From positions 55,800,001 to 55,864,000 of the forward strand of contig OZ296655.1 in assembly GCA_965655095.1 (NCBI GenBank): a DNA stretch of 64,000 bases, given 5' to 3'. Origin of the DNA: Haplodiscus bocki. Taxonomy: Eukaryota. Positions 20,319-48,800 of this stretch are shown here, piece by piece. How positions within the stretch are numbered: the stretch's first letter is position 1; every line of letters starts with the position of its first letter. The notes under the pieces were generated by a model that was given only the letters and a program-made list of their open reading frames with translations, was not told the DNA's origin and made no database searches. The translations under genes and the position numbers were made by a program.

Positions 20319-20497
20319 TTAAAACATGCATCTGCAATAAGTAGTAATGGCGTCTCTGTGAGCTTCCACGTTGTGCACTCTCAGAATGTCAACTCCGAGA
20401 CTCGCAGCCGCTAAATGAACGCCCAAAGTTCCACCCACTCTTTCTCTAACATTTTTTCTTCCTGTCAAATCTCCCACCATTCTTTTGTTGCTGGCGC
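20319..20497 (-). CDS. folP: DHPS exon 5 (GASNKRMVGDLTG...GVDILRVHNVEAHRDAITTYCRCMF*), not in the ORF track
   Basis: S-x-K and RVH motifs; TAG| acceptor; TAA stop at 20321-20319. Confidence 0.92.
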
Positions 20498-23400
20498 CTA
20501 CAATAATTGGATGTTAACAAGTGAATTTTAAGAAAAATAATATCTCTTTCGTTGTGCAAAAATTTCCATCAATGTTGTTCCAAATCAAGTTCGCCAACTT
20601 CCTTCTTTGTTACTTTCAGTCATTCAGGGGGCAAGACACGTGAGATCAGTATTTTTTTTCCAATTTTCACAATTTTTCGCAATCAATTTGAGAAAAAAAA
20701 ACTCGCAAAAGTGAAACCGTAATCCAAACCCAAAATATTAACCACATTTTGACATAACTTTTCAAAAACTACTTTGGGTCTCAATTTTCAAGCTTTAAAA
20801 AATCCTCTTGTACCAAAAATTGAATTTGATCAATAATGCTTCCTTAAATTGCCAACAAACACTACCTATGAGCACACAGAGGCCCATTTTCTTCAACAAA
20901 GGAATGGATTTGATTAACTGCAAATCATGTTCCAAAGTCTTCCCGAATCCTATCCCGGGGTCAATGCATAAATTAGCAGGACTTCCTCCCAACTCATAGT
21001 ACCTCCTGGTCAGTGATTAAATCGGTTTATAATTAAAAAAAAATTCGAAACATTTACAAATGATTTCGCTGACCCCATGAGCCAAAGAAAGCATGTTGGC
21101 GGTAAAATCATTTTGATGCAACGACAATAAACTGATACCAAAACTTCCTTTGCAACGAAAAAATATGTCCCTAATTGATAGATACGATCAAATAAAACAG
21201 TGCAAGAGTTATTTCAAGTTGTTGACTTTTCGACAATATTTATTCCTCTGTTCCAAAAATTTGAACAACTTTTGATAAAAATGACATCCAAAACCATTAT
21301 CATATTTGTTGTTTTACGTTCAAAAACTTAGTGAACAAATAACATAATTGCAGCAAAAATCCAATTAGTTTTTGCTTTCTCATCTACAATTCACCCGCCG
21401 CAGTTTGATAAGACTGTGTTCACAGTTGTTGCCAAAGGTGAGCCATTTTTAGAGTTCGAAAAATTTTATGCCTACCGATTTTTTTGGTTACCTTGTAGAT
21501 AGCCCAGTAACAACCATCATTTGAACAAGTCATTCGATTTACACTGCAATAACGCCAAAAAAAGCATGAATTGATAAAACACAGCTGGTTAAGATCTACG
21601 AGTGCACTCTTCAAGTCATTACAGCAATAATCCAAAAATGATTGTAAATAATGCATCCGCGATCAACGGCAGTGCATTACTGGCTCGATGCAAGTAAAGG
21701 CAGTTTTTAACTTATATATAATATTTTTCCAGTAAAACGCCGTTAAGGCCGCTATTCTTCCGGGGAATAACCACTTCTCTGGTTAATTTTGACCGCCGTT
21801 ATCGACCTTATACCACAGAAGTTTCGGCCGATATTTCGACCTTATACCACAGAAGTTTCGGCCGATATTTCGACCTGGGAAACAGTCAATATAAAAATAA
21901 GGGAGCTCTAGATGCCATCAAACAACGTGGCATCAACTTGGCGTGCACAGTGCGTGATCATACAAAACCAAGCATTATTTAGGATTTACAGGAAACATTT
22001 CAAATCTAGGTTTAACTTTCTTAGAGAAAAATCAATTCTAACTCCCCCGACAGTAGCAGCGAGAATTACAACGCACTATGTATGCGTGGACTCTTCTATG
22101 ATTGGTTGAAAATCACTCACGTGTACCATAAACTTTGACGTTGCTTATTTATTAACGTATGCAATTTCGCTAGGGGTTCGAATCAGTTAGAAGAGGGGAG
22201 CTAACAGAAAAGATCCGCACTTTAGTTTTCAAATCATGGCTGGGAACTGTGTTACTTAGTTATTTGCAACTGTCAATAAGTTAGCAAATGTTGAAAGATA
22301 TTTTTTATCGGCTTTTTTTCGTCTGAAATTCCTGGTAGGATTAACAGATTTTTCTGGTGCAGCACATGTTGCTTTTAATATTCTCTCGGTTAACACCAGA
22401 AGTCACAAAAACATTTCAGTTCGTGCTTTTGTGATTAGGAATACGAAGTTTAACGAAAAAAATTATGCCCGTATTTAAGTAAAAAAACTCGATACTTATA
22501 CTTAAATTCACTGCCAGTTGGTTTCAAATTCACCTTTTTCGAAACCTGCAAGAAAAGATGGCGCATAAACGGGGTGAATGTATTGGAATTTGATCAACTC
22601 AGTCTTTTTATAGTGTATGGAAATTGCCATTCTCCCCATTAGATTTAGAAAACCTTGAGATGCAAGCATCTGTGCAGTCAATTATTGAGCACATCACAGA
22701 TGAGAAAACCAACCACTTTTCAGATCTCAAAAACTGAAAAATCCAGAAAGAGTCAATAGTACAAAAAGAGGTAATTTTGAGTCGAAAACGAGAGTTAGAA
22801 ATGCGGTCAAAGCTCTTTTGAAATTCAATTGCGTCCCCATATTGATATACCACAGGGAAATGACTGTGGAAGTGAACGTTGACAATGCAATTTATAGAAA
22901 TCTTGAAGGACTTGACTATAATGGATCTCGCATTTACGACAACTACCAAGGTTCAACACACTCCTTTGTGGCATCTCGAACCTACAACAAAGATGGCAGT
23001 GCGATATACTCAAACCTAGCTGTGTTTATGCATCACGTGTCATGTGCTTTTGCAATAATCTTTCATGTTAACTTTTGTAGTAGGATGAGATAATTTCCAA
23101 GTTATTTGACAGCAATGATTTGTTCCAAAGTTTGTCTGAATTTTGGTAAGGTTTGATTTATTTTTCAAGTCATTCCAAAGAATCGAGTAAAATCTTCATA
23201 TAGTGGTGAGCGAAAAAAATGTCGCTTTTACAAAAAGGGTTATTGTGAATCTTTGAACCGACGAATGTTCTTGATATTCACACAATATATAGACATGGAA
23301 CTTCTCTTTCAAAACATGTAACATTTATTCTCTCGTGTGTAGCTGCTGAGAAGCAGAACACGTAAAGTTTGTTCACGATTTCGTGAAAACATGCAGAAGC

Positions 23401-25976
23401 AGCGAGTTATTCTTGAATTATGCTTCAATGAGTTAACTCATGATCGGAACACCTTACGAAACTTATCAAGTATGGCCCCAAGAACATTTCAGCGAAACAT
23501 GAAAAAGCTCGAAAACGGAGAAAGACTGGGACGGAAGGTTTGGAGAAAAAAAGAATTTTCAATGCGACATTTTTTTCGCTCACCACTATAGAACAACATG
23601 AGGAATCCTATATAAAATGGAGATAGTGAACCGTGTCTCGGCTTTTCAAAACTATCAGAATTATTCTGATGTGATTCCGAAAGACCGAAGCCAGCAAGTG
23701 GAAATAGGGAGCCAATAAACAGTGAGCAAACAAGATTCAGTGATAGAGTTTCCGTTATGGCGTCATGATGATCATGCCGAATGAAGAAAGCTGGCGCATG
23801 CTCATCAAGTCGTCCGCTATATTCACGCACCTGCTTTTTCATTCAGCGTGATATTAGTGACTTCGAAGCCAAAAAAACGGACGGTCTTTAAAATGTGTTG
23901 GACAGATTGAAAATTTAATACACCGATCTGGCAGAAGGTTTGCTAGTTACGAAAATGCGTGGAAAAGTTGCAAATCATAGTGAGTGCCCAAAAAACACCC
24001 GCAGAACAAGCTTTGAGCTAAAAAAAACTTTCGGAACGATTGAATCACTGTTCCTAGCTTTGTTCTCAAGGTAAGTGTAAACTTCGTTCACTACATCTTC
24101 ATACTTCGGATCGTTTTGCATAGTCAAGCTTGGGGCCAATCGATGCATGAGCACTAAAGGAATATTATAAGTGGCCGAAAACTCGATAGTAGCTCCATTT
24201 GAATCTTCGCCGGCTGATACGTCGTTTATGATGTTGGCACCGGAGAGAACAGCTTGTTTTGCCACTGATAATTTGGTTGTATCAATACTGATGGTAACTG
24301 TTTGGCCTTTCATCGGCGTTGTACGGTTGGGTTTACACAAACGCTTATTTGGTTTATTTAAGAAAAAGTTACTTTTCACTGAAAAACAGTTCCAATTTAA
24401 CTGACAGAAAAAAGTTAGGATTTTTTGTGTTTTTCAACTTCAATGATTTTTATTCAAAAATAGGTTGACTCCTAAAATAGTTCAAAATTATGAGACCCGA
24501 TTTTAAACATTGCACGAGACGAAAAAGTTATGGTCTCTTTATTTTATGCGACTATCATAATTCATCCATTCATGCTACTTTTTCAAATCTTGGAACATTA
24601 TTGAGTTTAGAAAATTTTTGCCCCATTCACAAAACCAAATCAATGCTAGAGGCTCTCCCTAACAGAGATTTATAAATTAATTGTGAATCCATGAAAATTT
24701 TCGAAGATCCTTCCATGTACAACACCACCTTTCGTATCTCTTCGAATTCCTTCAATCACAGGAATAACTCGGTCCAATTCCACAGTTTCTGATACAGGCA
24801 CACTTCCTATACATACCGATCAGTTTTTTAATCGCTCAAAATTCAAAGTATTAAAAGTTGAAATTCCTTGTAACGATCACGACTTGTTAATTACTGCGCA
24901 GAAGAAAGTACATTCCACTCATAGATTTAACAGACGCCGTATTTTTTGACAACTCCGTGATTTTTTAGGTTCACGATGGAAATTTCGAAGTAAGTCAGAA
25001 CTCCTTCGCAGTTTCAATCTTTTAATCCAGTAGATGAAACATATTCGGCAGTAAAAACAATTTGATTCATTTGGTCTAAAAATTACAAGGGTTGTCAGTG
25101 CAGCGATATTTGATCTAAATAAAGTAAAAAAAAACACAACGCAATTTTACCACACGACAGGCCGTACTTTCCTAAAAAGCAGCAAAATTCTATACGGTTA
25201 GTCAGCGCGTGGAAACAAGCCCGCCTATAGCGGTGACATTTCGTTTTTTTTTCAACCCGTGCGAACTGCCATTTTCCTACAACCTTTTAGCATGTCAAAT
25301 TTTGTTGGAAATCAGAATATCTTGAACGACAAAAGCGTGCCCGAAGTAATTCTAACGTGCGACAAAATTTTTTTCTATCTCCTCGACCTAAAACTGCACT
25401 GAGAAATCAAAACAGTTAAAAAAATTTCGAGACGCGCGGGCCCGGCTGACTTAGGCTGTTCCCGGCTTGTAGTCTTTTGAAAAGTAGAGCACCTGAGAGC
25501 TAGGTGAACTTTGAAATGCTCGTCAAAAATATTGATACTCGCATCAAAAAAAGCCGTCAATCAGAGGCATTGGCTCAACCTTGGCGAGGAAAGAAGTGCA
25601 ACTTTCATTCTCATATTTGACAAATCCAATACAATTCTTCCCGCAAAAAGCAGTCCTCTGTACTGGTTTTTTCAATCAAACTGAAAAAAAATCAGACATA
25701 AATCGAGCAATCCTTCAAGTAATTCAGAAAATACCCTTTTTCCATCTTCCGGAGATGTATGAGCGATTAAGCTGGTGTTCCTGGTCTAGAAGACTCTCCA
25801 CCAATATCTAAGATGTCAGCTCCAGCGGAAACGGCCTCCAATGCCTGTTTGAATGATCTCTCAGTATTGTGATTGGGGTCTCCGTCGTAGAAAGAGTCAG
25901 GGGTGCAGTTGACTACGGCCATCAAAAGAGGACACCCCCCTCGTTTCAATTTCGAACGCACGAACGAAGCAAACAT
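20319..25976 (-). CDS. folP: Dihydropteroate synthase, stand-alone, 5 exons: complement(join(20319..20497,20866..21005,24054..24297,24729..24806,25781..25976)), 837 nt, 278 aa
   Basis: The spliced product has the DHPS motifs in order with no stops: MAVVNCTPDSFYDG, GADILDIGGESSRPG, VSETVELDRVIPVIEGI, ISIDT, GANIINDVSAG, VLMH, YEDVVNEV, IDPGIGFGKT, VLIGASNKR, ILRVHNV. Exon phases are consistent (1,1,2,1). The start ATG is the first in-frame Met; an extra upstream exon cannot be excluded. Confidence 0.93.
20498..20865 (-). other. DHPS intron 4, 368 nt, GT-AG, weaker terminal arms
   Basis: GTAGTGTT-TGTTGGCAA ... TTGTTAACA-TCCAATTATTGTAG. 9 bp with two G-U pairs (20849-20857 and 20512-20520). Confidence 0.88.
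20866..21005 (-). CDS. folP: DHPS exon 4 (RYYELGGSPANLCIDPGIGFGKT...CVLI)
   Basis: DPGIGFGK motif; bounded by CAG| and TAG|GT. Confidence 0.93.
21802..21876. repeat. Tandem duplication, 34-bp period (2.2 copies), in DHPS intron 3
   Basis: tcgaccttataccacagaagtttcggccgatatt twice, then tcgacct. Confidence 0.95.
23199..23800 (+). mobile_element. Tc1/mariner-like DNA transposon remnant in DHPS intron 3
   Basis: TA|TAGTGGTG start resembles a TA|CAGTG TIR. ORF 23391-23591 resembles the N-terminal paired-like HTH (..RTFQRNMKKLENGERLGRK). No intact DDE domain. Confidence 0.4.
24054..24297 (-). CDS. folP: DHPS exon 3 (VTISIDTTK...INDVSAG...VLMH...YEDVVNEVYTYLENKAR)
   Basis: Pterin-binding Asp, Asn and Met motifs; bounded by CAG| and TAG|GA. 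Confidence 0.93.
24298..24728 (-). other. DHPS intron 2, 431 nt, GT-AG, terminal complementary arms
   Basis: GT-GGTGTTGTAC ... GTACAACGCC-GATGAAAGGCCAAACAG. 10 bp with one G-U pair (24717-24726 and 24315-24324). Confidence 0.88.
24729..24806 (-). CDS. folP: DHPS exon 2 (GSVPVSETVELDRVIPVIEGIRRDTK), not in the ORF track
   Basis: Matches the DHPS 'VSxEEELxRVIPV' helix; bounded by TAG| and AAG|GT. Confidence 0.92.
24807..25780 (-). other. DHPS intron 1, 974 nt, non-canonical GA-AG, terminal complementary arms
   Basis: GAACACCAGC-TTAATCGCTCA ... TGAGCGATTAA-AAAACTGATCGGTATGTATAG. The 11-bp arms are a perfect match (25760-25770 and 24828-24838). Confidence 0.82.
25781..25976 (-). CDS. folP: DHPS exon 1 (MFASFVRS...NCTPDSFYDG...DIGGESSRP)
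   Basis: Loop-1 and loop-2 DHPS motifs; ends CCAG|GAACAC. Confidence 0.92.
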
Positions 25977-29559: not shown

Positions 29560-31720
29560 TAGACTCACTTACAAGGAAACTTTTTAGTCTACTTTTGAAT
29601 ACCTGAAGACTTACACTTATATCTCGCAAACTCAAAGGCAGTGAGTTCCACTTCAAGAAAATGTGGTGAAAGAAAGATTTGGAGCAAGATGAAACAGATG
29701 GTACCTTCCCTCAAAGAATTATTTGATTGGAACGGTTATTCACCTGAAAATTTGCGATGGGTAACTTTATTGTCCACAAATGCTTCTTTTTCTATTGTTG
29801 ACATACAGGTAAAAACAGGTCAATGACTTCAGATCATTACGTTGCCGAATGCCGAGTACACTTTTGTGTATTCTCAAATCAAATGAACAAGTAAACCCTT
29901 GATGATGGAACGAAAATAAACAGACTTTAAAGCCCAATTCACCTGTTTCTCTAACGATAGTAATAACGTTAGGGTAATTTGCAGCAGCAATCAAGCAGAA
30001 TACTGGGAAGCACTCAAAAAGAGCCTGGAAAAGCATGAGGAGAACTGTTCTTAGAAACTTATGTTCTATACTTTCGATGGTTTTGATACCCACAGCCATT
30101 TTCTTCAATACCTTTTTGTTTTCAGTCTGGAAATCGAGGTGCTTATCAATTCTTACATGTATAAACTTACACTGATTCGATTTTTCAATTCTAGATGAGC
30201 CTACTACAATTGTGCCTGAGTTCTGCAGACGTTTATCTTACGAGAAAAAGTGATGAATTATGTTTCACTATCGTTCAAGATCAACCGCTTAAAAAAGAAG
30301 TAATTTTCTAATTTTACTACATTTTCCTGTCAGCGGTTAAGTGAAATCTCCGATTCACTATCGCTGCAATAGAGCAAGCAATCATCAGCAGACTGTATTA
30401 TATGAGCATTTTCTCTAATTTGATCCGAGAGGTCATTTACATATAAGTTGAACAGCAGGGATCCCAGCACAGTTCCTTCAGGAACACTTTCTTTCAGTTT
30501 AATCCAATCGGAGACTATTTTATTTACTGTAACTTTCTGTAATCTCTTCGTTAAGAAACTCTCAATGCATTCAATAGCCGAATGAGAAAAACTCAGTGAT
30601 TTCAATTTTTTCAGAAAGATTCCATGCGATAATGAGTCAAAAGCTTCAGATAAATCCAAAAATACTGCATGAACCACATTGCCATTTTCTATTGAATCAG
30701 ACCAATTATCAGCAGATGCGTTTTGACAGTACTTTTTAAAGGCGAGTTGGCGTTTAGCGAGCAAATTTTTGCAGTCATGACCGAACCAGGATTCTTTCAA
30801 AAGTTTCGGAATTTTCTTCGTTAGGAATACCTTTTCGAGGGGAGCATGCTTTTCCGCAGCACTAGACAACAAATTGACAAACATGTCAAACTTATCACTG
30901 GGAGTTGAACACTGATATACTTTAAACCATGGGAGACCTGACAATGTTTTGCAAAAAGCGATTTTGTCAAATTTTTTCAGGTCAAAACAGTGAATTATGA
31001 TGCGACTTAGTTTTCCAACAGTAATATCTGTAAAAAGAGCACAACCTAAGTGACCGGTTTTGAAAGGACTATCAAAAACAAAGCTTTTCTCGTCCGGTAT
31101 ACGTTCCGTTAGAATATAAACAAAGTGTGTTTTCGTAGTTTCACAAATGTGTGTTAGAAAAATTGGACCAGCTACTGAAAAACCGTAGGGCAAATTCGCA
31201 GTTTCTAGATTTTCCCGTTCCAGCGTTGTAAAGAAATCCAAATTGTAGTCACCCATCGTGGTGATCGGAAGCGGTTCGCAAGTAGCGTTATCAAAATTAC
31301 GCGACAATTGTTCGAGGGAGTCAATTTGGTTAGCTTTCAGAAGATTATAGGTTACATCCAGAAGCATTTTTGACTCACAAATATTAGAAAAGTTACAGCG
31401 GCATTCAACCCATGAAGATTCGAATTTAGATTTATCAAAAATATTCAAATCTTCACGTTCTTTCGGTGCTAGTCTTAAAGGCACAAAGAGCATTACACCG
31501 CAACCCTTCTTTATTTCATTGTTTTGATTTCTAACACATATAAATAGTTCATTGTGGAAAAAGCGACGTTCCATTAAGATAAATCATCATCAGGCGTGAG
31601 CCAGATTCCAGAGATACCAACTATAGCATTTTCGCCCACGTCGCTAACAAAAGATTTCAACGGCATCCGTTTGTTTGTTACACCTTGAAGTTCATGTGAA
31701 TGAAGGGCAGTGTCTATTTG
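29560..31720 (-). pseudogene. LINE ORF2 (APE endonuclease + reverse transcriptase), with internal deletion and stops
   Basis: GISGIWL, KKGCGVML and MGDYNLD (APE); VFLDLSEAFD, VPEGTVLGSLLFNLYVNDL and SADD (from YADD). The sequence jumps from the linker straight to RT domain 3. Confidence 0.9.
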
Positions 31721-31861: not shown

Positions 31862-32574
31862 TCAAAACGAATACTTTTTCAAACTATTGCAGGCATTAGC
31901 GAGTAGCTCATTATCACACTTTTGTAGCTTATAAAGATTATCAAATACCAGCTTTTGGTTATCTAGCATGAATATAAAAATTTTCCCATTTGCAGTTACA
32001 ACACTGCGAACATCATCTTTACTTCTCAGGTCAAGGCTCATTTTTGCACGTAAAGGCGTCAAGTCATCATTTACATAGATACTGGTTTCTTTCAGATTCC
32101 TCCTGTGCTTCATAAATTGGTGCTTAGTATCCCACCTGACAAACTTAGCAATTAGAGGTTTTTGGCCCTTACCTCCGCCAGGTAGGCGGTGACAGGCACT
32201 AACATCACGAGCAAAGATTGTGACGCCAGCTTTTTCAGCCACACTAACCACCTTGGCGAAGACGTCTTCATCCGGCTCCTCCTCTACACCAAAGATGCGC
32301 ACGTTCTCCCTTCGCCCGCACTGCTCAATGCTGTCGGCCTCTATGATTAGGGACCGGTCATCCACAGTAGAAGCTCTCATCTGCAGCTCCTCAACAGCGC
32401 AAATGCCGCAAAGGAAAAGTTTTTGGGAATGAGCGTAGACACCCAAACGTTTGTCCAGATGATGCAGCCATTCCTGTCCATTCCAGGTCCAGTGCACTCC
32501 ACGAGATGGTTGCTGCCGTCGTCCTTCTTTGCTGGGTTTGGCGCAGATGCTGAGTTGTTGCGCGTCGGCGCCAT
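31862..32574 (-). pseudogene. LINE ORF1p (coiled coil + RRM-like + C-terminal domain), frameshifted near the N-terminus
   Basis: EQCGRRENVRIFGVEE, ACHRL, PLIAKFV and IYVNDDLT motifs typical of the L1-type ORF1 of CR1/L2/Jockey-group LINEs. Confidence 0.85.
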
Positions 32575-33799
32575 CAGTTATTCTATAGTAAATCTTTTTA
32601 ATAAGTTTATCACGACAATCTCAATTTATGAAATTTTTGAAATTGAAATATTCCACGAAATGCATGAATAAATCTTGCCCCTTCCTGATTTTAAGGCATG
32701 CCTGGAACTTCAAAACTTCCTTGCAGATTAAATTGAATTCACCTAGTCTGGAGCGTCATGAGAAATAATAAAAGAATAAATGAAGAAATTTTAGGAAAAA
32801 ATTGGGACAAAATCGGATTGCAACATCAAGCTAATAAAACAAAAAGAAAGGCTATTAGGCAAGAGAGGAATGAAGAGAGCCCGCTGAAAGCGCCGGTGCA
32901 ACAACATCTCTGGCCGCTCTTGCATGGAAGTTTTACATGTTTTTGTAAGTTGCCTGATATGACTTTTTACAAGTTTTAACATGAAGCATGGAAAATTTTA
33001 TATTGCATGAAATTGTGACTGCTGGCGGGACTTGTTACTAAACTTTTCCATACAATATACAAAATCTGAATGCAGCAGACATATTTCAATTTATACAAAA
33101 TTTTCCATTCAGTATTAAAGATTTTCCACGCACATTTCCAAATAATACGCGCCGTTCAAAATTTGTCATCGCGGTAATTTACTCATTTCGCTGTTTTTTT
33201 ATTAAGACCCCTGAAAGATTTCATGAGCAACAGAGGTTTATCATTAAGTAAAAATAGGACGTTTCAGCAATCTGTGAGCAATTTTCGATCGAAAAACAAA
33301 AATTTCAGAAAAAAACTGAATCAAAATGTTGGAGGCTTAAAACTGGTTTTATCTAATTGAGTCCGGACACCATAATTAAACTTTCATCCAGGTCAAGTCG
33401 ATAGTTTGTTCTCACTGACTTTCTTTCTGGAGAGGTGACAAATACTTTGCTGAGGTGAAGTAGAGTATTTAAAAAATGGGAAAGTATTTTTCGATACGTT
33501 TTGTGAGCTTTTTGCATTGCAATTTCGTGAAATTTTTGCAAGTTTTAAAAAATTTTGCATGATTTTTCCATGGAAGATCCCTAAATTGTCGATGTTTTAC
33601 AAGAAATATCCCTGCATGCATTATTACAACAAGCAAAATTTTCATGCGAGTCCGACTTGGGATACCATTCTATTATGCAAAAAATTTTTTACACCAGCTG
33701 TCCATCAGTTTGTTAGAAAAAGCTAAATTAAGATATGTACCTGTCACAGGGTCTCACACTCGAAAAGGAGATATGTCAGTCATATTTTTTCAAAAGACT

Positions 33800-37650: not shown

Positions 37651-39282
37651 CTAACTCTCCAAGTCGATCTGGAATTCTACCACTAGTAAATTTTTGTAAT
37701 CGAACAGAAACAAACTTTTTTCACTGTTCCATTTAATATTATCAACCGCAATGAGACCATGGTGCGTGTAGTTGATGTTAAGGCGTAAGTTCTTGCCCGG
37801 GCAAAATACAGTGACATTTTTAAATGAATCAATAACAGCATAATGATTGATGGAACATCTAAAAAGCACTGGTTTTTCATCCAATAACAATGTATCACTC
37901 GGCGTAGACTTGGGGTAGAACTCAATTAGTTTACGATCAACGTTCCAACTTGCACAAGAAAATGATTCATCGTCCCAAAAAATTAGGTCCAAAGGGACGG
38001 TGCTTTTGTCTTGAAGGAACTCATATTCGATAATCTGCGTCTCCAGATTATAAATAAAAACATTGTTGCTTTTGTTGCACATTGCCAACCAGTTACTCCA
38101 AATAAAAACCGATTCCACCTCACAATCGCGGAGGTCAAATGTTTCTAAACTCCACCTTAGCGGGTGGGCTGGATCACCAATTTTCACATCGAGAACACAA
38201 AAATTGACCACTCCATCAGACTTAACAACTCCAAAAACATCATTACTTGAATCAAAATTTCTCGAAATTTCACTTGTCGCCGTCACCTTCATGTCATTAC
38301 CATTCAATATCTGATGACTTCTTTCAGTAACTTTTGTCCACATTTTGACAACTTTCGGAGTCATCTTGATTAATTCAGGTACTTCGATTGAACTTACAGC
38401 GTTTTCAATTGCAGCTTCAAACAGCACGTCTAAATCTTTGGTCCATTTTAAACACACGTGTTGTTCCAGTTGCTTTCGCTGATCTGTGATAGAATTCCTC
38501 AGAAGTTTTTCAATTTCTAGATACTTGGAAGTTAAATTTCCTTCACAAAGAGTCAAAACATCTTTCAAATTAAAGAAACTACATTCTGCACGTGCAGTTA
38601 CTTCTTTCAACACTTCTCTATCTTTTTCCGAGACCGCGCCACTTTCGCTTTCTGTTGACAAAAACTTTTCCTGGTTCAAGCCATACCATTTTTTGGGCTT
38701 TGAAGCGATCACTCGGTCAAGCGTATCTCGGATTACTTTTACGAATTCGGTTTGATCTGACGGCACAGTTTGACAGATTGCATCGAAAGATCATTCCACA
38801 ATGTCTTCGAGATGCTTGATAGGTTTAGAAAGCTCCTCAAAATCAGAGATAAAAGCAAAGACTGTTTTCCGAACCTCACATGCTTTTGCAGAAACAGATT
38901 TGAAGTCATGTTTTGTATGACACTCTGTACACTGAGAACAAAACAGCACTTTCCAGTCTTCACAAAAATATTGGAGAAGATTTACATGCTTGTCACATAC
39001 TGCAGGCGAAAAACCCCTATGATCTATGACATCATGCTTTTGTCTTAGATGAAGAGCGACGATACAAATGCTGCAGAAGAATTTTTCTGCACTGGAAAGT
39101 TCACCACAACTGTTATAGCAAGTTCTGCAACGAAATGCTATGTTTAGATCCAAACATTGCGAACAGCTGTGACACAAACATTCCTTTCCATCTTCAATTT
39201 CAGGATCCATCTTCAAAACTGGATCCATTAGTTTGTTTTGTTTAGCTGCGACAGGGCATTCAATTTTTTCTATTACCGACAT
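37651..39282 (-). pseudogene. Intronless double B-box / coiled-coil / beta-propeller-like (RING-less TRIM-like) gene, 543 codons with one in-frame TGA at 38791-38793
   Basis: CHSC..FRCRTC..FFCSICIVALH..H (B-box-1-like) and VCDKH..YFCED..LFCSQCTECH (B-box 2), then a helical region and a beta-rich C-terminus. ORFs 38791-39282 and 37651-38766 are in the same frame. Confidence 0.75.
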
Positions 39283-40563
39283 TGCTCCACTGAAATAAAA
39301 CCAATCGCTCGCGTGAAAAAAAATATTTCATCAATCAACGGCCACTTTCAGAGAATCAAAAGAAACTGAAATCTAAAACAAAGGTTGCGTAATAACATCA
39401 GGAGCTCGACGCTCAAGTCACAGATGATTTTTTTCAGACAGAGAAGAGCGATGGAAAATCAATTGAAACGAAAAACTCACCCCAAAAATCCAAGATAGCC
39501 AAAAATCAGATCTGATGCATCCTCTCGAAACTGAATTTAAATAGAACTTAAGAAAATCAGTGCAACAGATGCATTTTAGGTGCTTTATATGCAGAACCAC
39601 TCTCGCTCTATACTCAAACTCGTACAAGCTGGACCATAAAAAATCTGTGGCCCACATGTTCTAACTGCTTTCAAACTGTTATTATGTAAAAGTGGTCCGT
39701 TTTTTACGGATCTCCTTATTCTCAATTCCATATGCCCATCATCATGCCCTTTAGGTAGCGTCTCTTTACATCCTAATTTTCATGAAATTCGCACAATAAA
39801 GAAAGCAATAATTGATAAATACCTTCCGAATGCTCAAAAATTTCGTCTCCGAGCGTTTAATCGCAACGATAGACATTCTGATGACGTCGGGAACTCTTAA
39901 CACCGGACAGTAAAAAATAAAGAGCCGGCACTGTGCAATTCTAATACACGAACTGAAACTTTATGAAGCACATTTCAATGAAGGGCAAATCCACTAATCT
40001 GTCCATACGACCTCGTTTCAATTTTATTCTTATATCGGAGAACTAAATTTTCTTCAGAGTAAAACTATCATCAAACAATACATCGAGAAAAATTCAATGC
40101 AATCATTTTGTCATTTATAACAGTACAACATTTTTCTCATAAAAATGAACACTCGCCGTAAGATGAAACTCTTCTTTGCTTCCTCCCGAGCTGCAAAAAT
40201 TTTGATAATCCATCCATCAAAGCTTTCCACTTACACATGACCAAAACTTTCCACATTTTTCACACAATCAGCTTATTTTGTAGTCGATTTCGCACTTTTC
40301 GATCGTCAGTATGGTAAAAAAATCATAGTTTGAAATGTGATCAAAATGGCCTTTTCTCAGTGAAAATAGCAATGCAGTTGAAGTTCATCCATTTGTCTTC
40401 AGACTTTTACTCATTATTCATCTTGCTGCCACATACTTTTGCGAAAATTTTTTTTGCAACCCGTAGGATAGCAAAGAAGCCACTAAAGCACTAATTACAG
40501 CAATCAAATTCGTCGAATTATTAAACAATCTAGCAACTTACACTAAATTTGGTTCATGTTTCA

Positions 40564-43759: not shown

Positions 43760-45830
43760 TCATACACGGGCAAGTTCAGCTGCTCGAATTAATGTAAAAT
43801 TTCGTTCCTTTTTTGCTACATAGGTGGCTGCTGCATCGCTGTGATTACTAGCCACCGTAACCAAAGGTTTCATTGGCAGATTACCCGTAGGTGTGCGCAT
43901 AAATTTCGGTACGAGATCCCGAATATATTTGACTTTATAATACAAGTACATTACCAAAACATGGAGCAGTAAGTTGGCCACAAAAGCAACTGCTGTGAGA
44001 GTTATGGATATGCAAAGCGGTACATATGTGTTGAAATTATCTACCAAAGTATTTTAGCTCCGTCATACGTGTTGCAATCGGGGTAGCTAATTTAACTAAG
44101 TGACATCCACTATATGCTGTGACTTACCTAACTCCGCTCTTATTTCTGATGAAAATGCTGTCGTCGCTTCTGCTCTTGTCCGGTAGTATGGGAGTTCTTC
44201 CAGTGGCGGAACTTTATTCAAAAGTGCCTGCAATGGATGAGGAAGTTGAACTGTCAACCTTTTCGCTAGTATTTTGTCACAACTTTCAAGATCAGGGCGA
44301 ATCTTGATATGCTTGCTGGCCATCTGAATTCACATGCCAATGTGATAATAAGATTGTACAGCCCGGAATATCTGTACGTCGTACCGAGTTACCTGTACAT
44401 TGATTAAACTCACGTAGCGTTAGACACTGCCGTTAATAGTCGAATTCCATATCGAAGATTTGTGGCTTTCTCAGGTGTTGGGAGAGTGATTTTCTCAGGT
44501 TCACACACTTGCAATGCAGCGATTGCATTGTGGAAAAAGAGCGTAGCTAAACACGAACTCTAGCCCAAGTGTGTCTCCATCGTTTTGTGACAAATTTTAT
44601 AACGGGCAGAACCCAAACAATCGGCGAACTGCTCGAATGGCAATACAGTTGATTCCATCATGTTCTCGCTAACAGCCAAATAAGGTCCTTCGATCTTCCA
44701 TTGCAATGCGACACCAGGTTCCTTTTCAGGCATCGGGATTAGATGCGCCCAAAAAACATAGAAAGCTGTCTCACTGGAGACCAAAGGATTCGCTAATGTC
44801 AAAAGCAGACATTGCGGAACTGTAGAGATCTCTCTCACTAGCTTCGCATCGTAGTAAGACACGATGTCTTGCATAAGAATCGCTAGTCTGAGTCGATCAA
44901 GATTTTTCATCTGGGCTTCATGAACTGATTCTAACATAGCATTTAATGAAGCACGTGGTACCAATGAAATCGGAAAATTTTTATCAAGCAAACTAGGTAC
45001 TGCATTCGCCAAATAGAGTCGGTACGTTTAGAGTGCCGCTCGATAACTCTTGATATCTGCGTACAGTGGTAGAAGTAGTGCTGCAACTGTATCATAATTG
45101 AAATTTAGCTGTTGCTGGGTATACAAAAATTGAGTGCAGTCTCGTAAAACATGAAAGTTCTTATAAAACACCTCAAATTGTTTCTCGACAACTTCCCAAA
45201 TACGGTTCTGATTGCCTCCCATCTCTTGTTGAATCTTATGGATAGATTTGAGTTCATTGTACACCAAGAAGAACTTTTCATCATTCTCTTGTGCTACTTC
45301 CATAACAAAATCCGTGAGCATAGAAGCGTGTTGTTGCAGTCGATCAATATTCTCAGCGTTCTGTCTGCCAGTGTCCTGACAAGAACCAAAGATTCCTGTT
45401 ATTCCACTGCATTGATTCCCCATCATGATTCCAGATCCAAATACTCCAATGCCAGCTAGAGCCATTGCTGCTACTGGTAAGCCACGCTTCTGACGTCGAA
45501 CATGGGTCTCATCCATCGCCAGAAGTGTTGTCTCATTGCCCATGTCGCGCACATCTTGCTTCGCAGCTTGCATTTCGGTCAAAAATTTGGTATACAGCCA
45601 GTTAACATTGAATGGTTTACTTGATGCATTGAAATGTTGAGATTCATCCATTGGACAGAAAACAGTAGGCGTAGCCCACATTGTTTCCAACTCTTTCAGC
45701 CGTGCCTCAATTTGCGCTTTAGCTTTAAATGTACGCTTCGGAAAAGGAACCAAGAATTCCACATTCACGAAGTTCTCAGCGAGAAGTATTTTTGACACTT
45801 CATGAAATAGTCTGTATACTGGTCCGAATT
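43760..45830 (-). pseudogene. env: env-like fusion glycoprotein (class I / F-type), interrupted by stops and frameshifts
   Basis: Furin site RRQKR, then hydrophobic fusion peptide GLPVAAMALAGIGVFGSG, heptad region (NAENIDRLQQH..ELKSIHKIQQ), Cys-rich ectodomain (CLGSARYKIC) and a C-terminal TM helix (LCISITLTAVAFVANLLLHVLVMYLYY). Confidence 0.85.
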
Positions 45831-48800
45831 CGCTTGCTGTTGGGTCGGACTTGCAAATTGAAAAACGAATTACAGAAAAACTAGTGCGTACATATCGTTG
45901 AGCTCTCTAGCCTTCTTCACTCTAGCGTGGAAAACTGGATAGTGATAGTTTTGTTCTAACTTATTTTCCTCAATTTATACGAACATTAATCTATAATTAG
46001 CTATTGACGCATTACGCCCAATATACTTAGGTCAAGTAGGCCAGGGAGTGAGCCAACTAGTTCCGGACCCACAGTTGGTCATTCCGTGTGGTTTATTAGT
46101 CAAAAGTAAATTCTGAGCTTGCTAAATGCACTTCACATATGTGTTAAAATACTATGTTTTCATGCCTGACTCAATAGAAGTCGTTAACCTGTCATTAAAT
46201 TTGTTTGAAAGACCAAAAATGGTATGACTCCAAACACCAATTTAAAAGTTACTAGGTATCTTTTAGATTCTTCTTGTCAATCATGCTGTCTTGCCCTCAC
46301 GCAGAGAGTGGTAGCATTACAATTTACTGCTGTAGAAATGGAACAATAGCGAGTAGTGGTAGCAATACAGCCTTCAGTAGAAGATTATATCCTCTGTGTA
46401 GAATATTAGTCAGAAGTGTTACTCCTCGAGTCTGAAGAAACTGATACAGTATAAACTCGTCCTATAATGTCTAGTTATATTATTAAACTTAGTTCATTTA
46501 TTATTTGTAATTATAGAGCTTGGAGATGTTATCGACGTAGTCGCAGATCCAGTAATTAGTTTATACTGTAAATAGTACATACACATAACTAGTGTAAATG
46601 TTAGATATGCTGTACTCAGATGTAGATAGTGTAAACATGTTAGTGAAGATAGTGCGTTGAGCTAGATTGTTAATGGTTACATGTAGTACATACTTGTAGA
46701 TAAAACCTTTTCGTTAGCATATCTTTTTTAGTTGCAGCTTTATGGTAGTATCTCATCGTAAATATTTCATAAAAATTTCTCTTGGGCTGGTACTAGTAAT
46801 TAAAATAGCAAACTGGGTAGTGGTCTCTGCGATTTATGCTGGGTTTTGCGATAGATCTGTTCGGACTAATAGATTACTAATTTGGTTTGAGAGGTAAAAT
46901 ACAACTAAAATTACTTTCAGAAAGCTAATGCATTCTTCTGAAAGAGCCTGTTCTGTCGCTCTGTTGCGTTCAAAGAGCTTTAACGAAGACTTCAAATGGC
47001 CCGCTATCTTGAATCGAGACAAACGGAAGCAGATGTGGGACCGTTCCCGAAGTCTGGCGTTGTCTGAGTCTGGAGCGTTGATGTACCAAGGCAAGAAAGT
47101 ACCAAGTTTTGCAGAGTGTTTGGATGCCTTGGGTGACCTTCATCCACCTGAGTTGACAACAGGGCACTCATGTAATCTACGGTCCCATGCCACAATTCCG
47201 GAGTAGAAAGGGTGGAAGTTACAAGCTTTCCTCGTAGGCAACCAAGCTGCTGCTGCTCGGTTGCTGCTCGGTTGGTCATTACATTAATCTGTGTAGACTT
47301 ATAACATCAGTGGTTTGGATCAAGTGTGAAATCAGATCTTGATATATTTTAGAGTTCAACGGGAGTGTATTGTGTGCTTCTTCGTTATCAGACAAGGACA
47401 AACCATCTGTGCCAAGCCTCCTGAAACTTTTCAGCTGAAAAAATGGTGTACTGAGCTTGGGTACACGTTTCACAAGGACACCCTGAATGCACTACGAGGA
47501 CCAAGCTCCACCTTAGAGGAGCCGGAGCCAATTTCGCATCGGTCAAACCTCGCAGAAGGGGATGATGATTGTGCGATCAGCGCACTCCAATATGCGCTGA
47601 CAGGGAAACGTTCGAGTAAGTAAAATTCATACAAAATTCAAAAAATACGGACAGATACATGCAAAAACTGCGCTATTTTAGATCGATAACGAAAGAAAGG
47701 GACGGAGGCGTGCACGAAGATTCCACGACACCTCGTCAAATCGATGCGATCCCCGGAGGTCTTCGAGCTGGCCAAGAAGCATTTCAGGTACTACGTGGCC
47801 ATTTTCGACATTGACGAGAGTCGAACGGGAGGAAGTATTCAGGAGTTTTGGTTAAGTAAATCATCACACAAACCCAAAAAAATGACAAAGTACATGTTGG
47901 AAAATAAAGTGTTTCAGTACCTATGAATCGCATATATGCTTGGCGTGAACTTCCTTGTGTTCTGACAGTACCCAAACGGAAAATGATGGTCTTTCTGGGA
48001 CACAAACTGGGATCACAGAGGGGACATGCAGTCATCTTTAATGCAGTCTATTGCTGGACAGGAACTCGCAACCAACTGGTGGCACAGTACCATACAAGGC
48101 CACTCGCTCTTGAAGACAGGTGAGATAGAACAATGCAGCAAAAGAAGAATGAAAACATTTCCAAACTAAGAAAATCATGGATATTTCAGTGATGACGAGT
48201 CCGAAAAAGAAGAGATGAACGAGTGACCACCTTTAATAGAAACCTCAGCAGCTGCATGATGAAGCTGGGCCATCAACTCCCTAACAAAAAGTCGGGCGAC
48301 ACGAGGTAACGTCGCCGGGCAGGTATGTAAAAAGTTATGATGTAAAATGCGAAATGTAGGAAAAAGATAAATGGATCTTGAAGGTAAGGTAGAATATAAA
48401 TCAACAAGGCAAGGACCAGATAAAGTCTACCGGGGCACACCCTCGAGTGTATGAGGGTATCCAAAAAACAAAAGAGGCGGAATTGCCACATTCAGGAAGT
48501 AAAATAAGCACGAGACGGCAAAATCATGCAGAAAATTGAGGTATAATTACTCGCAAAAGGAAGTAAAATGGTAAAAGGACACCCAGTATGAATACAGGAT
48601 GGGTGCAAATGGACTCCAACCGAAACGAATAGGGTCAAGGATATAAGAAAAAGCCTGCCCAAGCATTAAAACATGGTCAAAAGGACAAAAACAGACAAAA
48701 CTTGACCATTTCAGAGGGTTTTTGGGCATAGCGCAACCATTGCCAAGCAAAATTAAACGATCAATTTGGGCAACCGTAAGGGTATTATTGTGACCTAGGG

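What the first reader, a model, noticed from the sequence alone, without database searches (positions are those of the whole stretch)
21006..25780. Two of four introns need non-canonical GA donors (AG|GAACA...AG|GA)
Seen in sequence: at introns 1 and 3 the only junctions giving a gap-free DHPS are CCAG|GAACAC...TATAG|GA (GGESSRPG-SVPVSE) and CTAG|GAACAG...ACCAG|GAGG (ENKAR-RYYELGG...DPG). Nearby GT/GC alternatives either delete the conserved SSRPG loop or remove 5-6 residues and need a poor GAG acceptor. Reading through intron 1 hits TAA after 3 codons. Both donors share GAACA. Established: GA-AG introns are very rare in most eukaryotes but enriched in a few lineages such as Oikopleura and dinoflagellates. 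Inference: this genome tolerates GA donors routinely, the two GA introns have the strongest stems, and standard gene finders would mis-annotate many genes here. Junction repeats (AGGA) let the exact cut site slide by a few nt.
Basis: partly seen in the sequence, partly recalled or inferred. Interest (0 to 1): 0.85.

Follow-up and report, generated by a model that had tools for sequence, protein, structure and literature searches.

The report
GA-start introns in acquired DHPS gene
A folate-pathway gene that an acoel-type worm took from bacteria has since gained four introns, and two of them can only be removed in frame if splicing starts at GA instead of the near-universal GT, the rare intron type so far reported as common only in one copepod and one tunicate; no RNA data exist yet to prove it.

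Summary
On the minus strand, five exons (25976-20319) join into an intact 281-residue dihydropteroate synthase. Introns 1 (25780-24807) and 3 (24053-21006) start with GA in the context YAG|GAACA and end with AG.

- **Not a sequencing error:** contigs from four DNA runs (two samples) and a second diverged copy of the locus all carry GA.
- **Intron 1:** every GT-AG alternative loses at least 30 bits against a DHPS profile and deletes the SSRPG loop.
- **Intron 3:** the case is good but weaker.
- **Selection:** the two copies differ by 10 synonymous and 6 non-synonymous changes (dN/dS 0.17, p=0.0008), so the spliced frame has been translated. The second copy, however, has a frameshift in exon 1.
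- **Match to known cases:** the donors have the published features of Eurytemora affinis GA donors (exon AG, A at +3).
- **Host:** a spliced-leader relic suggests an acoel, where I found no report of GA-AG introns.

No RNA run exists, so splicing is inferred. Routine genome-wide GA use was not testable here; four other unchecked notes from this scan report GA-AG introns elsewhere in this genome. Verdict: probably real GA-AG introns, a new member of a known kind.

The parts
25781..25976 (-). DHPS exon 1 (ATG at 25976). It ends ...CCAG in phase 1 and has an 18-residue basic N-terminal extension before the bacterial-type start MAVVNCTPDSF.
   Evidence: (Pterin_bind profile 1-47, E 5.6e-12)
24807..25780 (-). 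Intron 1, 974 nt, GA...AG (CCAG|GAACAC ... GTATAG|GAAG), bounded by the 5-nt junction repeat AGGAA. It is single copy in the DNA runs.
24729..24806 (-). DHPS exon 2 (78 nt), encoding (G)SVPVSETVELDRVIPVIEGIRRDTK.
24307..24728 (-). Intron 2, 422 nt, canonical GT...AG (AAAG|GTGGTG ... GAAAG|G). An alternative in-frame acceptor lies 9 nt downstream (exon would start at 24297).
24054..24306 (-). DHPS exon 3 (253 nt). It ends ...GCTAG in phase 2.
   Evidence: (profile 73-153, E 1.8e-17)
21006..24053 (-). Intron 3, 3048 nt, GA...AG (CTAG|GAACAG ... GACCAG|GAGG), with junction repeat AGGA. Its ends are single copy and its interior carries high-copy repeats.
20866..21005 (-). DHPS exon 4 (140 nt). It starts with the codons for RYYELGG, which are homologous to the bacterial sequence.
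20498..20865 (-). Intron 4, 368 nt, canonical GT...AG (ATAG|GTAGTG ... TTGTAG|G).
20319..20497 (-). DHPS exon 5, with TAA stop at 20321-20319.
25760..25770 (-). 5' arm (intron positions +11 to +21, TTAATCGCTCA) of an 11-bp perfect helix between the two ends of intron 1.
   Evidence: P about 0.001 against random 40-mer pairs of the window
24828..24838 (-). 3' arm (TGAGCGATTAA, 22-32 nt before the acceptor) of the intron 1 end helix.
24043..24050 (-). 5' arm (intron positions +4 to +11, CAGTGATT) of an 8-bp perfect helix between the two ends of intron 3.
   Evidence: P 0.013-0.046 depending on the span
21011..21018 (-). 3' arm (AATCACTG, 6-13 nt before the acceptor) of the intron 3 end helix.

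Best explanation
Introns 1 and 3 of this gene are genuine spliceosomal (U2-type) introns with GA-AG ends. They are of the same kind as the GA-donor introns documented in the copepod Eurytemora affinis and the tunicate Oikopleura dioica. The gene is a stand-alone bacterial-type dihydropteroate synthase that entered an animal genome by horizontal transfer. The host is most likely an acoel flatworm related to Symsagittifera. All four introns must therefore have been gained after the transfer, and two of the four were born with GA donors. Inferred mechanism: the 5' splice site is defined by the invariant exon-terminal AG, G at +1 and A at +3 (YAG|GAA), which offset the lost pairing at +2. The acceptor is an ordinary YAG|G. 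Short helices between the two intron ends may help bring the sites together. What is shown: the letters, the only gap-free junctions, conservation of both GA donors in a second diverged copy, and purifying selection on the spliced frame. What is inferred: the actual splicing, the recognition mechanism, and that GA use is a property of the whole genome.
For: (1) The five-exon model gives an intact 281-aa DHPS, and Pfam Pterin_bind is tiled consecutively by the exon pieces. (2) I enumerated every in-frame, stop-free donor/acceptor pair within +/-60 nt and scored each against an HMM of 52 homologues. The GA-AG model scores 337.3 bits. At junction 1 the best GT-AG alternatives score 307 and 303 bits and delete the SSRPG loop. 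An AT-AC pair scores 321 bits but lacks any U12 donor motif. At junction 3 the best canonical pairs are 7-12 bits worse. (3) In a MAFFT alignment with the 17 closest homologues the model is gap-free at junction 1 in 17 of 17 and at junction 3 in 15 of 17. RYYELGG, encoded directly after the CAG acceptor, aligns with RYLSLGG of P0018. With that acceptor fixed, GA is the only in-phase donor within 15 nt that starts with G. (4) The GA letters appear in contigs of 4 DNA runs from 2 samples. They also appear in a second copy, L003, which has 2.0% exon and 3.5% intron divergence. (5) Between the two copies there are 10 synonymous and 6 non-synonymous changes: dN/dS 0.17, binomial p=0.0008. Exons 4-5, downstream of both GA introns, have 4 synonymous and 0 non-synonymous changes. 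Exons are less diverged than introns (Fisher p=0.02). (6) The donors CAG|GAACAC and TAG|GAACAG match the 31 RNA-verified E. affinis GA donors: 31/31 have exon AG, 30/31 have A at +3, 26/31 have a pyrimidine at -3, and 6 start GAAC. The same AG|GAA context is reported for O. dioica. (7) The nearest homologues are 41-45% identical over the full length (best P0168, 45%). The two I checked lie on bacterial contigs: P0002 beside rpoC, and P0004 beside smpB, flagellin and ligA. So the introns post-date transfer.
Against: There is no transcript evidence of any kind: no RNA run holds the stretch, and no transcript-derived orthologue is in the protein collections. The second copy, L003, carries a 1-nt deletion in exon 1 (codon 32) that destroys the frame, so the gene is dispensable or decaying in part of the population, unless that is a contig error. 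Intron 3 has a canonical in-frame alternative only 7.3 bits worse. Four of the five exon differences seen in sample S2 are non-synonymous, though at positions that vary among homologues. The donors match the U1 consensus poorly beyond +3, and no variant U1 gene could be examined: there are no Rfam hits in the window.
Confidence: 0.68

Rival explanations
1. The locus is a decaying relic of a transferred bacterial gene. The four 'introns' are plain insertions that are never spliced. Removing each insertion plus one copy of its short flanking repeat restores the frame simply because insertions do not delete flanking sequence.
For: All four interruptions are flanked by short direct repeats (AGGAA, GAAAGG, AGGA, TAGG) that could be target-site duplications. 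There is no RNA evidence. The second copy has a frameshift in exon 1. The region is rich in transposons.
Against: dN/dS is 0.17 (p=0.0008) in exactly the spliced frame, including exons downstream of both GA introns. The 281-codon frame is intact despite roughly 55% divergence from the nearest bacterial proteins. All four interruptions have a register with G at +1 and AG at the 3' end, set in AG|G exon contexts. Introns 1, 2 and 4 and the ends of intron 3 are single copy, and the introns are unrelated to each other, so they are not members of one transposon family. A basic N-terminal extension was added to the bacterial core.
Confidence: 0.12
2. Only intron 1 is GA-AG. Intron 3 is removed through a canonical pair instead. 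The candidates are donor ATC|GTTCCG 16 nt downstream with acceptor TATGAG|T 13 nt downstream (one extra residue, ...ARNSDSILGG...), or the GT at +6 with the GAG acceptor 20 nt downstream.
For: Both pairs are in frame and stop-free, and they cost only 7.3 and 12.2 bits because this segment of DHPS is variable. A GT (ACA|GTGATT) lies 5 nt inside the intron.
Against: These pairs discard RYYE, which is homologous to the bacterial sequence and encoded immediately after a good CAG acceptor. The acceptors they need are GAG inside purine-rich coding sequence, downstream of that CAG. The donor GTTCCG lacks the consensus at +3 and +5. The GA-AG product has the same length as 15 of 17 closest homologues. 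The donor context TAG|GAACAG is near-identical to that of intron 1 and to verified copepod GA donors.
Confidence: 0.12
3. The introns are removed by a route that depends on pairing of the intron ends rather than on 5' splice-site sequence, as with euglenid non-conventional introns or the non-canonical introns of Fritillaria. On this view GA is incidental.
For: The ends of the four introns are more complementary than random window segments. Intron 1 has an 11-bp perfect helix (P about 0.001), intron 3 has 8 bp at +4/-6 (P about 0.03), and introns 2 and 4 have 11 and 10 bp when G-U pairs are counted. My Fisher combination of the four Watson-Crick P values at a 40-nt span gives about 4e-4 (hand calculation).
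Against: All four introns keep G at +1 and AG at the 3' end in AG|G contexts, as U2-type introns do. Duplex energies are only modestly below controls, with P of 0.02-0.16 per intron. The helices are not terminal in intron 1. No covariation can be tested, because the arms are identical in the second copy. The same GA context works in E. affinis, where no conserved nearby sequence element was noticed.
Confidence: 0.06
4. The A at +2 is a T>A sequencing or assembly error, and both introns are ordinary GT-AG.
For: None found.
Against: Contigs from four runs and two samples, plus an independently assembled second copy, all read GA at both donors.
Confidence: 0.01

Closest known systems
GA (and GG) donor introns of the copepod Eurytemora affinis (Robertson 2017, PMC5714493; Frey & Pucker 2020, PMC7072748)
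   Same: The ends are GA...AG. AG is obligate at the end of the upstream exon, A sits at +3, and -3 is mostly a pyrimidine. The introns are constitutive and required for the full-length protein, and they are lineage-specific recent gains. Six of the 31 copepod donors even start GAAC, like both donors here.
   Different: The copepod cases are verified by RNA-seq and make up about 10-12% of introns in the genes sampled. Here there is no RNA and only two introns in one gene. The host here is apparently an acoel, not an arthropod. Both introns here also carry end-to-end helices and junction repeats of 4-5 nt, which were not described for the copepod.
GA-AG introns of the tunicate Oikopleura dioica (as analysed in PMC7072748)
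   Same: GA-AG is more frequent than GC-AG in that genome, in the same flanking context (AG upstream, A downstream). Oikopleura is also a lineage with spliced-leader trans-splicing (established knowledge).
   Different: Oikopleura introns are mostly tiny in a compact genome (established knowledge), whereas these are 0.97 and 3.0 kb. Frequency in the present genome is unknown.
Alternative GA 5' splice sites of vertebrate FGFR1-3 (Brackenridge et al. 2003, cited in PMC5714493 and PMC7072748)
   Same: A GA dinucleotide is used efficiently as a U2-type 5' splice site.
   Different: The FGFR sites are alternative and depend on a canonical GT six nucleotides upstream. No GT lies upstream of either donor here, and the sites would be constitutive.
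Introner-type, transposon-generated introns (Gozashti et al. 2022, PMC9860276)
   Same: The introns are recent gains, are flanked by short direct repeats that overlap the splice sites, and have inverted repeats near their ends.
   Different: The four introns share no sequence with each other, and their ends are single copy in the DNA runs, so no multi-copy family is evident. The inverted repeats are not strictly terminal.
U12-type (minor spliceosome) introns
   Same: They also have non-GT-AG terminal dinucleotides.
   Different: There is no /ATATCC or /GTATCC donor motif, and the termini are GA-AG rather than AT-AC.

Membership tests
U2-type GA-AG introns of the Eurytemora/Oikopleura kind | Intron begins G-A and ends A-G | tested here: met
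   This is the only register within the junction repeats that has G at +1 and AG at the 3' end and gives the gap-free protein.
U2-type GA-AG introns of the Eurytemora/Oikopleura kind | Obligate AG as the last two exon nucleotides | tested here: met
   The donors are CCAG|GA and CTAG|GA. The feature is defined in PMC5714493.
U2-type GA-AG introns of the Eurytemora/Oikopleura kind | A at intron position +3 | tested here: met
   Both donors read GAA, as do 30 of the 31 copepod GA donors.
U2-type GA-AG introns of the Eurytemora/Oikopleura kind | Actually removed from the mRNA at these positions | not testable with these tools
   No RNA run holds the stretch, and no transcript-derived orthologue is in the protein collections.
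U2-type GA-AG introns of the Eurytemora/Oikopleura kind | Constitutive: needed for the full-length conserved protein | tested here: met
   Read-through gives a stop after 3 codons (intron 1) or 22 codons (intron 3, ORF P0001). The spliced frame is under purifying selection.
U2-type GA-AG introns of the Eurytemora/Oikopleura kind | GA donors frequent genome-wide (several per cent of introns) | not tested
   The window has no other recognisable intron-bearing host gene. Only four unchecked notes point to it.
U12-type introns | Donor /RTATCCTT and a TCCTTAAC-like branch site | tested here: not met
   The donors are GAACAC and GAACAG. The in-frame AT-AC pairs start ATCGCT and ATCGTT and score 7-16 bits worse.
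Introners (multi-copy transposon-derived introns) | Many near-identical copies in the genome, including in other genes | tested here: not met
   Depth is about single copy over introns 1, 2 and 4 and both ends of intron 3. There is no similarity among the four introns or to the rest of the window.
Introners (multi-copy transposon-derived introns) | Target-site duplication that supplies a splice site, plus terminal inverted repeats | tested here: inconclusive
   The junction repeats run 4-6 nt, where AG|G alone predicts 3. By my hand estimate the excess is only marginal (about p 0.05). The inverted repeats of 8-11 bp are near-terminal, not terminal.
Dihydropteroate synthase (Pfam PF00809 Pterin_bind) | Full-length match to the family profile with the conserved motifs (N-x-TPDSF, GGESxRPG, SIDT, INDV, DPGxGFGK, RVH) | tested here: met
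   All five exon pieces hit PF00809 in order. The model scores 337 bits against an HMM of 52 homologues. The motifs are visible.

The most novel reading that the evidence does not exclude
Acoel flatworms may be a third animal lineage in which the spliceosome routinely accepts GA donors. Like the other two (a calanoid copepod and Oikopleura), acoels use spliced-leader trans-splicing. In this reading GA donors are a by-product of how new introns are born. DNA inserts into an AG|GA(A) site with a 4-6 nt duplication, so the +2/+3 letters of the new intron are copies of the first letters of the downstream exon. Inverted repeats near the ends of the insert then help pair the splice sites. A gene of bacterial origin, in which every intron must be new, would be the cleanest natural experiment for this: two of its four new introns are GA.
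Probability: 0.3. Interest if true: 0.75.

Novelty: new member of a known kind. Interest (0 to 1): 0.5.

Why it matters
If GA donors are used here, standard gene finders and RNA-seq aligners that insist on GT/GC will break or miss genes in this genome, as happened in Eurytemora. Because this gene came from bacteria, all of its introns are datable as post-transfer gains. Two of four being GA would tie GA donors directly to recent intron birth. A third, phylogenetically distant GA-tolerant lineage would let one ask what the lineages share (spliced-leader trans-splicing, rapid intron turnover, U1 or U6 variants), and so what sets the near-universal +2 U rule.

Tried and rejected
- **RNA evidence:** the one run search found only four DNA runs from one study. 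Laying their contigs showed no intron-less (processed) DNA copy that would have revealed the junctions.
- **Orthologues in relatives:**
  - The exon-3 search of 1.84 billion representatives found only the window's own ORF, then bacterial proteins at 54% identity or less.
  - The P0001 search found one second copy in the same assembly.
  - A profile search seeded with the exon pieces found nothing above 45% identity to the model.
  - The exon-1 ORF search gave two short ORFs on long contigs that looked like split eukaryotic genes. Both proved to be frameshifted bacterial DHPS genes in bacterial neighbourhoods.
- **Other test genes in the window:** 40 long ORFs scanned against Pfam gave only reverse transcriptase, integrase and a B-box, and Rfam gave nothing. 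GA frequency therefore could not be measured.
- **Host identity:** the calanoid copepod spliced leader is absent. The full 31-nt Symsagittifera leader was not found at 3 mismatches or fewer, but its 3' 20-mer matched once. An Atlas search of the TRIM-like ORF gave no useful taxon.
- **Rejected readings:** U12-type introns (no motif), introner family (single copy, unrelated sequences), T>A error (DNA contigs).
- **Left out:** walking along the 409-kb source contig to sample more genes. Few look-ups remained, and the exact called proteins were unknown.
Full report
**What is there.** The region holds one gene on the minus strand. Five exons (25976-25781, 24806-24729, 24306-24054, 21005-20866, 20497-20319) join into 846 nt, encoding a 281-residue protein with a TAA stop and no internal stop or frameshift. 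Each exon piece on its own hits Pfam PF00809 (Pterin_bind, dihydropteroate synthase). The matched profile ranges are consecutive: 1-47, 51-71, 73-153, 160-200, 204-244. The introns are:

| Intron | Coordinates | Length | Ends |
|---|---|---|---|
| 1 | 25780-24807 | 974 nt | CCAG\|GAACAC ... TATAG\|GAAG |
| 2 | 24728-24307 | 422 nt | AAAG\|GTGGTG ... GAAAG\|G |
| 3 | 24053-21006 | 3048 nt | CTAG\|GAACAG ... ACCAG\|GAGG |
| 4 | 20865-20498 | 368 nt | ATAG\|GTAGTG ... TGTAG\|G |

The intron 1 junction repeat is in fact 5 nt (AGGAA), not 4.

**Are the GA letters real?** No RNA run holds the stretch. Four DNA runs from one study (two samples) do. Their contigs cover both donors with no alternative letter at 25779/25780 or 24052/24053, although many other polymorphisms are listed nearby. 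A database search with the exon-3 ORF found a second copy of the whole locus in the same public assembly: L003, a different contig with 34x against 52x coverage, collinear with window 38952-16664. It has both GA donors and all four acceptors unchanged. A T>A error is excluded.

**Are GA-AG junctions really required?** I built an HMM from 52 full-length homologues. I then scored every in-frame, stop-free product obtainable by moving the donor and acceptor by up to 60 nt at each junction. The model scores 337.3 bits.
- **Junction 1.** The only equal-scoring products are the same protein cut in other registers of the AGGAA repeat, and only GA...AG has G at +1 and AG at the end. The best GT-AG pairs score 307 and 303 bits and delete the SSRPG loop. 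An AT-AC pair scores 321 bits but starts ATCGCT, with no U12 motif.
- **Junction 3.** The margin is smaller. The pair ATC|GTTCCG ...

An alignment with the 17 closest homologues shows the GA-AG product is gap-free at junction 1 in all 17 and at junction 3 in 15. RYYELGG, encoded directly after the CAG acceptor at 21006, aligns with RYLSLGG, TFMKLGG and EFVNMGG of the homologues. That fixes the acceptor. With it fixed, GA is the only in-phase donor starting with G within 15 nt. So intron 1 needs GA beyond reasonable doubt at the sequence level, and intron 3 very probably does.

**Is the spliced frame used?** The two copies differ at 17 of 845 exon positions (2.0%) and 154 of 4340 aligned intron positions (3.5%; Fisher p=0.02). 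Indels are abundant in introns. In the spliced frame the changes are 10 synonymous and 6 non-synonymous, giving dN/dS 0.17 and binomial p=0.0008. Exons 4-5, which are translated only if both GA introns are removed in frame, have 4 synonymous and 0 non-synonymous changes. The six replacements fall at positions that vary among bacterial homologues. This is the signature of a translated gene.

Two points weigh against it. The second copy has a 1-nt deletion in exon 1 (codon 32) that breaks the frame, so it is a null allele, a decaying duplicate or a contig error. And the five exon differences seen in sample S2, which are a subset of the L003 differences, are 4 non-synonymous to 1 synonymous.

**Origin of the gene and the host.** The nearest proteins are 41-45% identical over the full length. 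The two I checked lie on bacterial contigs: P0002 beside rpoC, and P0004 beside smpB, flagellin and ligA. No eukaryotic orthologue was found. The gene sits among LINEs, LTR elements and a TRIM-like ORF, on a large chromosome-scale piece.

At 32594-32620 (minus), at the 5' end of a LINE, lies a 27-mer that matches the Symsagittifera roscoffensis spliced leader at 25 of 27 positions. The chance expectation for the 20-mer core is 0.02. The window's G+C content and kilobase-scale introns also resemble the figures published for that acoel, 36.7% G+C and 2.5 kb average intron length. An earlier follow-up in this scan independently called the genome an acoel. So the host is most likely an acoel related to, but not identical with, S. 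roscoffensis. Because the gene is bacterial in origin, all four introns were gained after transfer.

**Comparison with what is known.** GA donors are exceedingly rare in most eukaryotes. They make up 10-12% of introns in sampled genes of Eurytemora affinis and outnumber GC-AG in E. affinis and Oikopleura dioica. Their defining features are an obligate exon-terminal AG and A at +3. In the 31 RNA-verified copepod GA donors, 31 have exon AG, 30 have GAA, 26 have a pyrimidine at -3, and 6 begin GAAC. The two donors here, CAG|GAACAC and TAG|GAACAG, meet every sequence feature.

Robertson also found the copepod GA introns to be recent, lineage-specific gains, which parallels the post-transfer introns here. 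Full-text searches found no paper that links GA-AG introns with acoels. The S. roscoffensis genome paper does not mention non-canonical splice sites in any passage holding the words splice, intron or canonical. This is therefore a new member of a known kind. It is not a new kind, and it is not proven without RNA.

**Side claims.**
- **Introner origin.** The four introns are unrelated in sequence, and their ends are single copy. No introner family is evident.
- **End helices.** Intron ends are more complementary than random window segments. Intron 1 has an 11-bp perfect helix (P about 0.001) and intron 3 an 8-bp helix 3 nt from the donor and 5 nt from the acceptor (P about 0.03). Introns 2 and 4 have 11 and 10 bp when G-U pairs are counted. 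By duplex energy, however, the GT intron 2 is strongest. 'GA introns have the strongest stems' is therefore only half true.
- **Junction repeats.** The repeats (AGGAA, GAAAGG, AGGA, TAGG) exceed the AG|G expected from splice consensus only marginally (my hand estimate is about p 0.05). In the two GA introns the repeat extends downstream, so the +2 A copies the second letter of the next exon. That would fit intron birth by insertion with a short duplication, but this is inference.

**Limits.** Routine GA use across the genome could not be tested, because 40 further ORFs of the window gave only transposon domains and a B-box. Four other first-reader notes in this scan report GA-AG introns elsewhere in this genome, one bounded by CAGGAA; none has been followed up. 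They are leads, not support.

Noticed in passing
window 32594-32620 (-), upstream of ORFs 31865-32620 and 30333-31583 (RVT_1): A LINE-like element begins with a 27-mer that matches the Symsagittifera roscoffensis spliced leader at 25 of 27 positions (ATTGTCGTGATAAACTTATTAAAAAGA). It suggests the host is an acoel, and it fits other notes that LINEs in this genome carry spliced-leader relics at their 5' ends.
   Followed up: partly
L003:8412-13922 (second copy of the DHPS locus, same public assembly, contig at 34x against 52x): This diverged copy or haplotype (exons 2.0%, introns 3.5%, upstream flank about 11% different) keeps all splice sites. It has a 1-nt deletion in exon 1 (GACGGAGAC to GACGAGAC, codon 32) that frameshifts the gene, and its stop codon is TAG instead of TAA.
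   Followed up: partly
window 23201-23590 (inside intron 3): A 390-bp Stowaway-like MITE with about 25-bp terminal inverted repeats (TAGTGGTGAGCGAAAAAAATGTCGC...) and a TA duplication. It is present here but precisely absent from the second copy, and this part of the intron has depths in the thousands in all DNA runs, so the family is abundant and recently active.
   Followed up: partly
window 24298-24306 (start of exon 3): Intron 2 has a second in-frame acceptor 9 nt downstream (CCAAACAG|TT). It would drop Gly-Gln-Thr and fits the DHPS profile 5 bits better than the upstream acceptor, so it may be an alternative 3' splice site.
   Followed up: partly
window 25923-25976 (-): The protein has an 18-residue N-terminal extension (MFASFVRSKLKRGGCPLL) ahead of the bacterial-type start. 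It is basic and has no acidic residues, like a mitochondrial presequence, and it is conserved in the second copy apart from one A-to-T residue change.
   Followed up: no
window 37654-39327 (-); L003:1-1456: A TRIM-like ORF (B-box, then a region with beta-propeller-like features) is interrupted by one in-frame TGA at 38791-38793 in the window. It is called as one open 594-residue product in the second copy. Another ORF pair, 44563-45906 (-), is split by a single in-frame TAA at 45028-45030.
   Followed up: partly
window 21843-21876 (inside intron 3): A 34-nt unit (AGGTCGAAATATCGGCCGAAACTTCTGTGGTATA) is tandemly duplicated here and single in the second copy. The neighbouring stretch 21637-21827 has depths in the thousands. 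The second copy also has a 300-nt insertion next to window 21649.
   Followed up: no
window 20498-25780, ends of all four introns: All four introns have 8-11 bp helices between their first and last 40 nt. My Fisher combination of the four Watson-Crick P values is about 4e-4 against random window segments. All four also sit in AG|G sites with 4-6 nt direct repeats across the junctions.
   Followed up: partly
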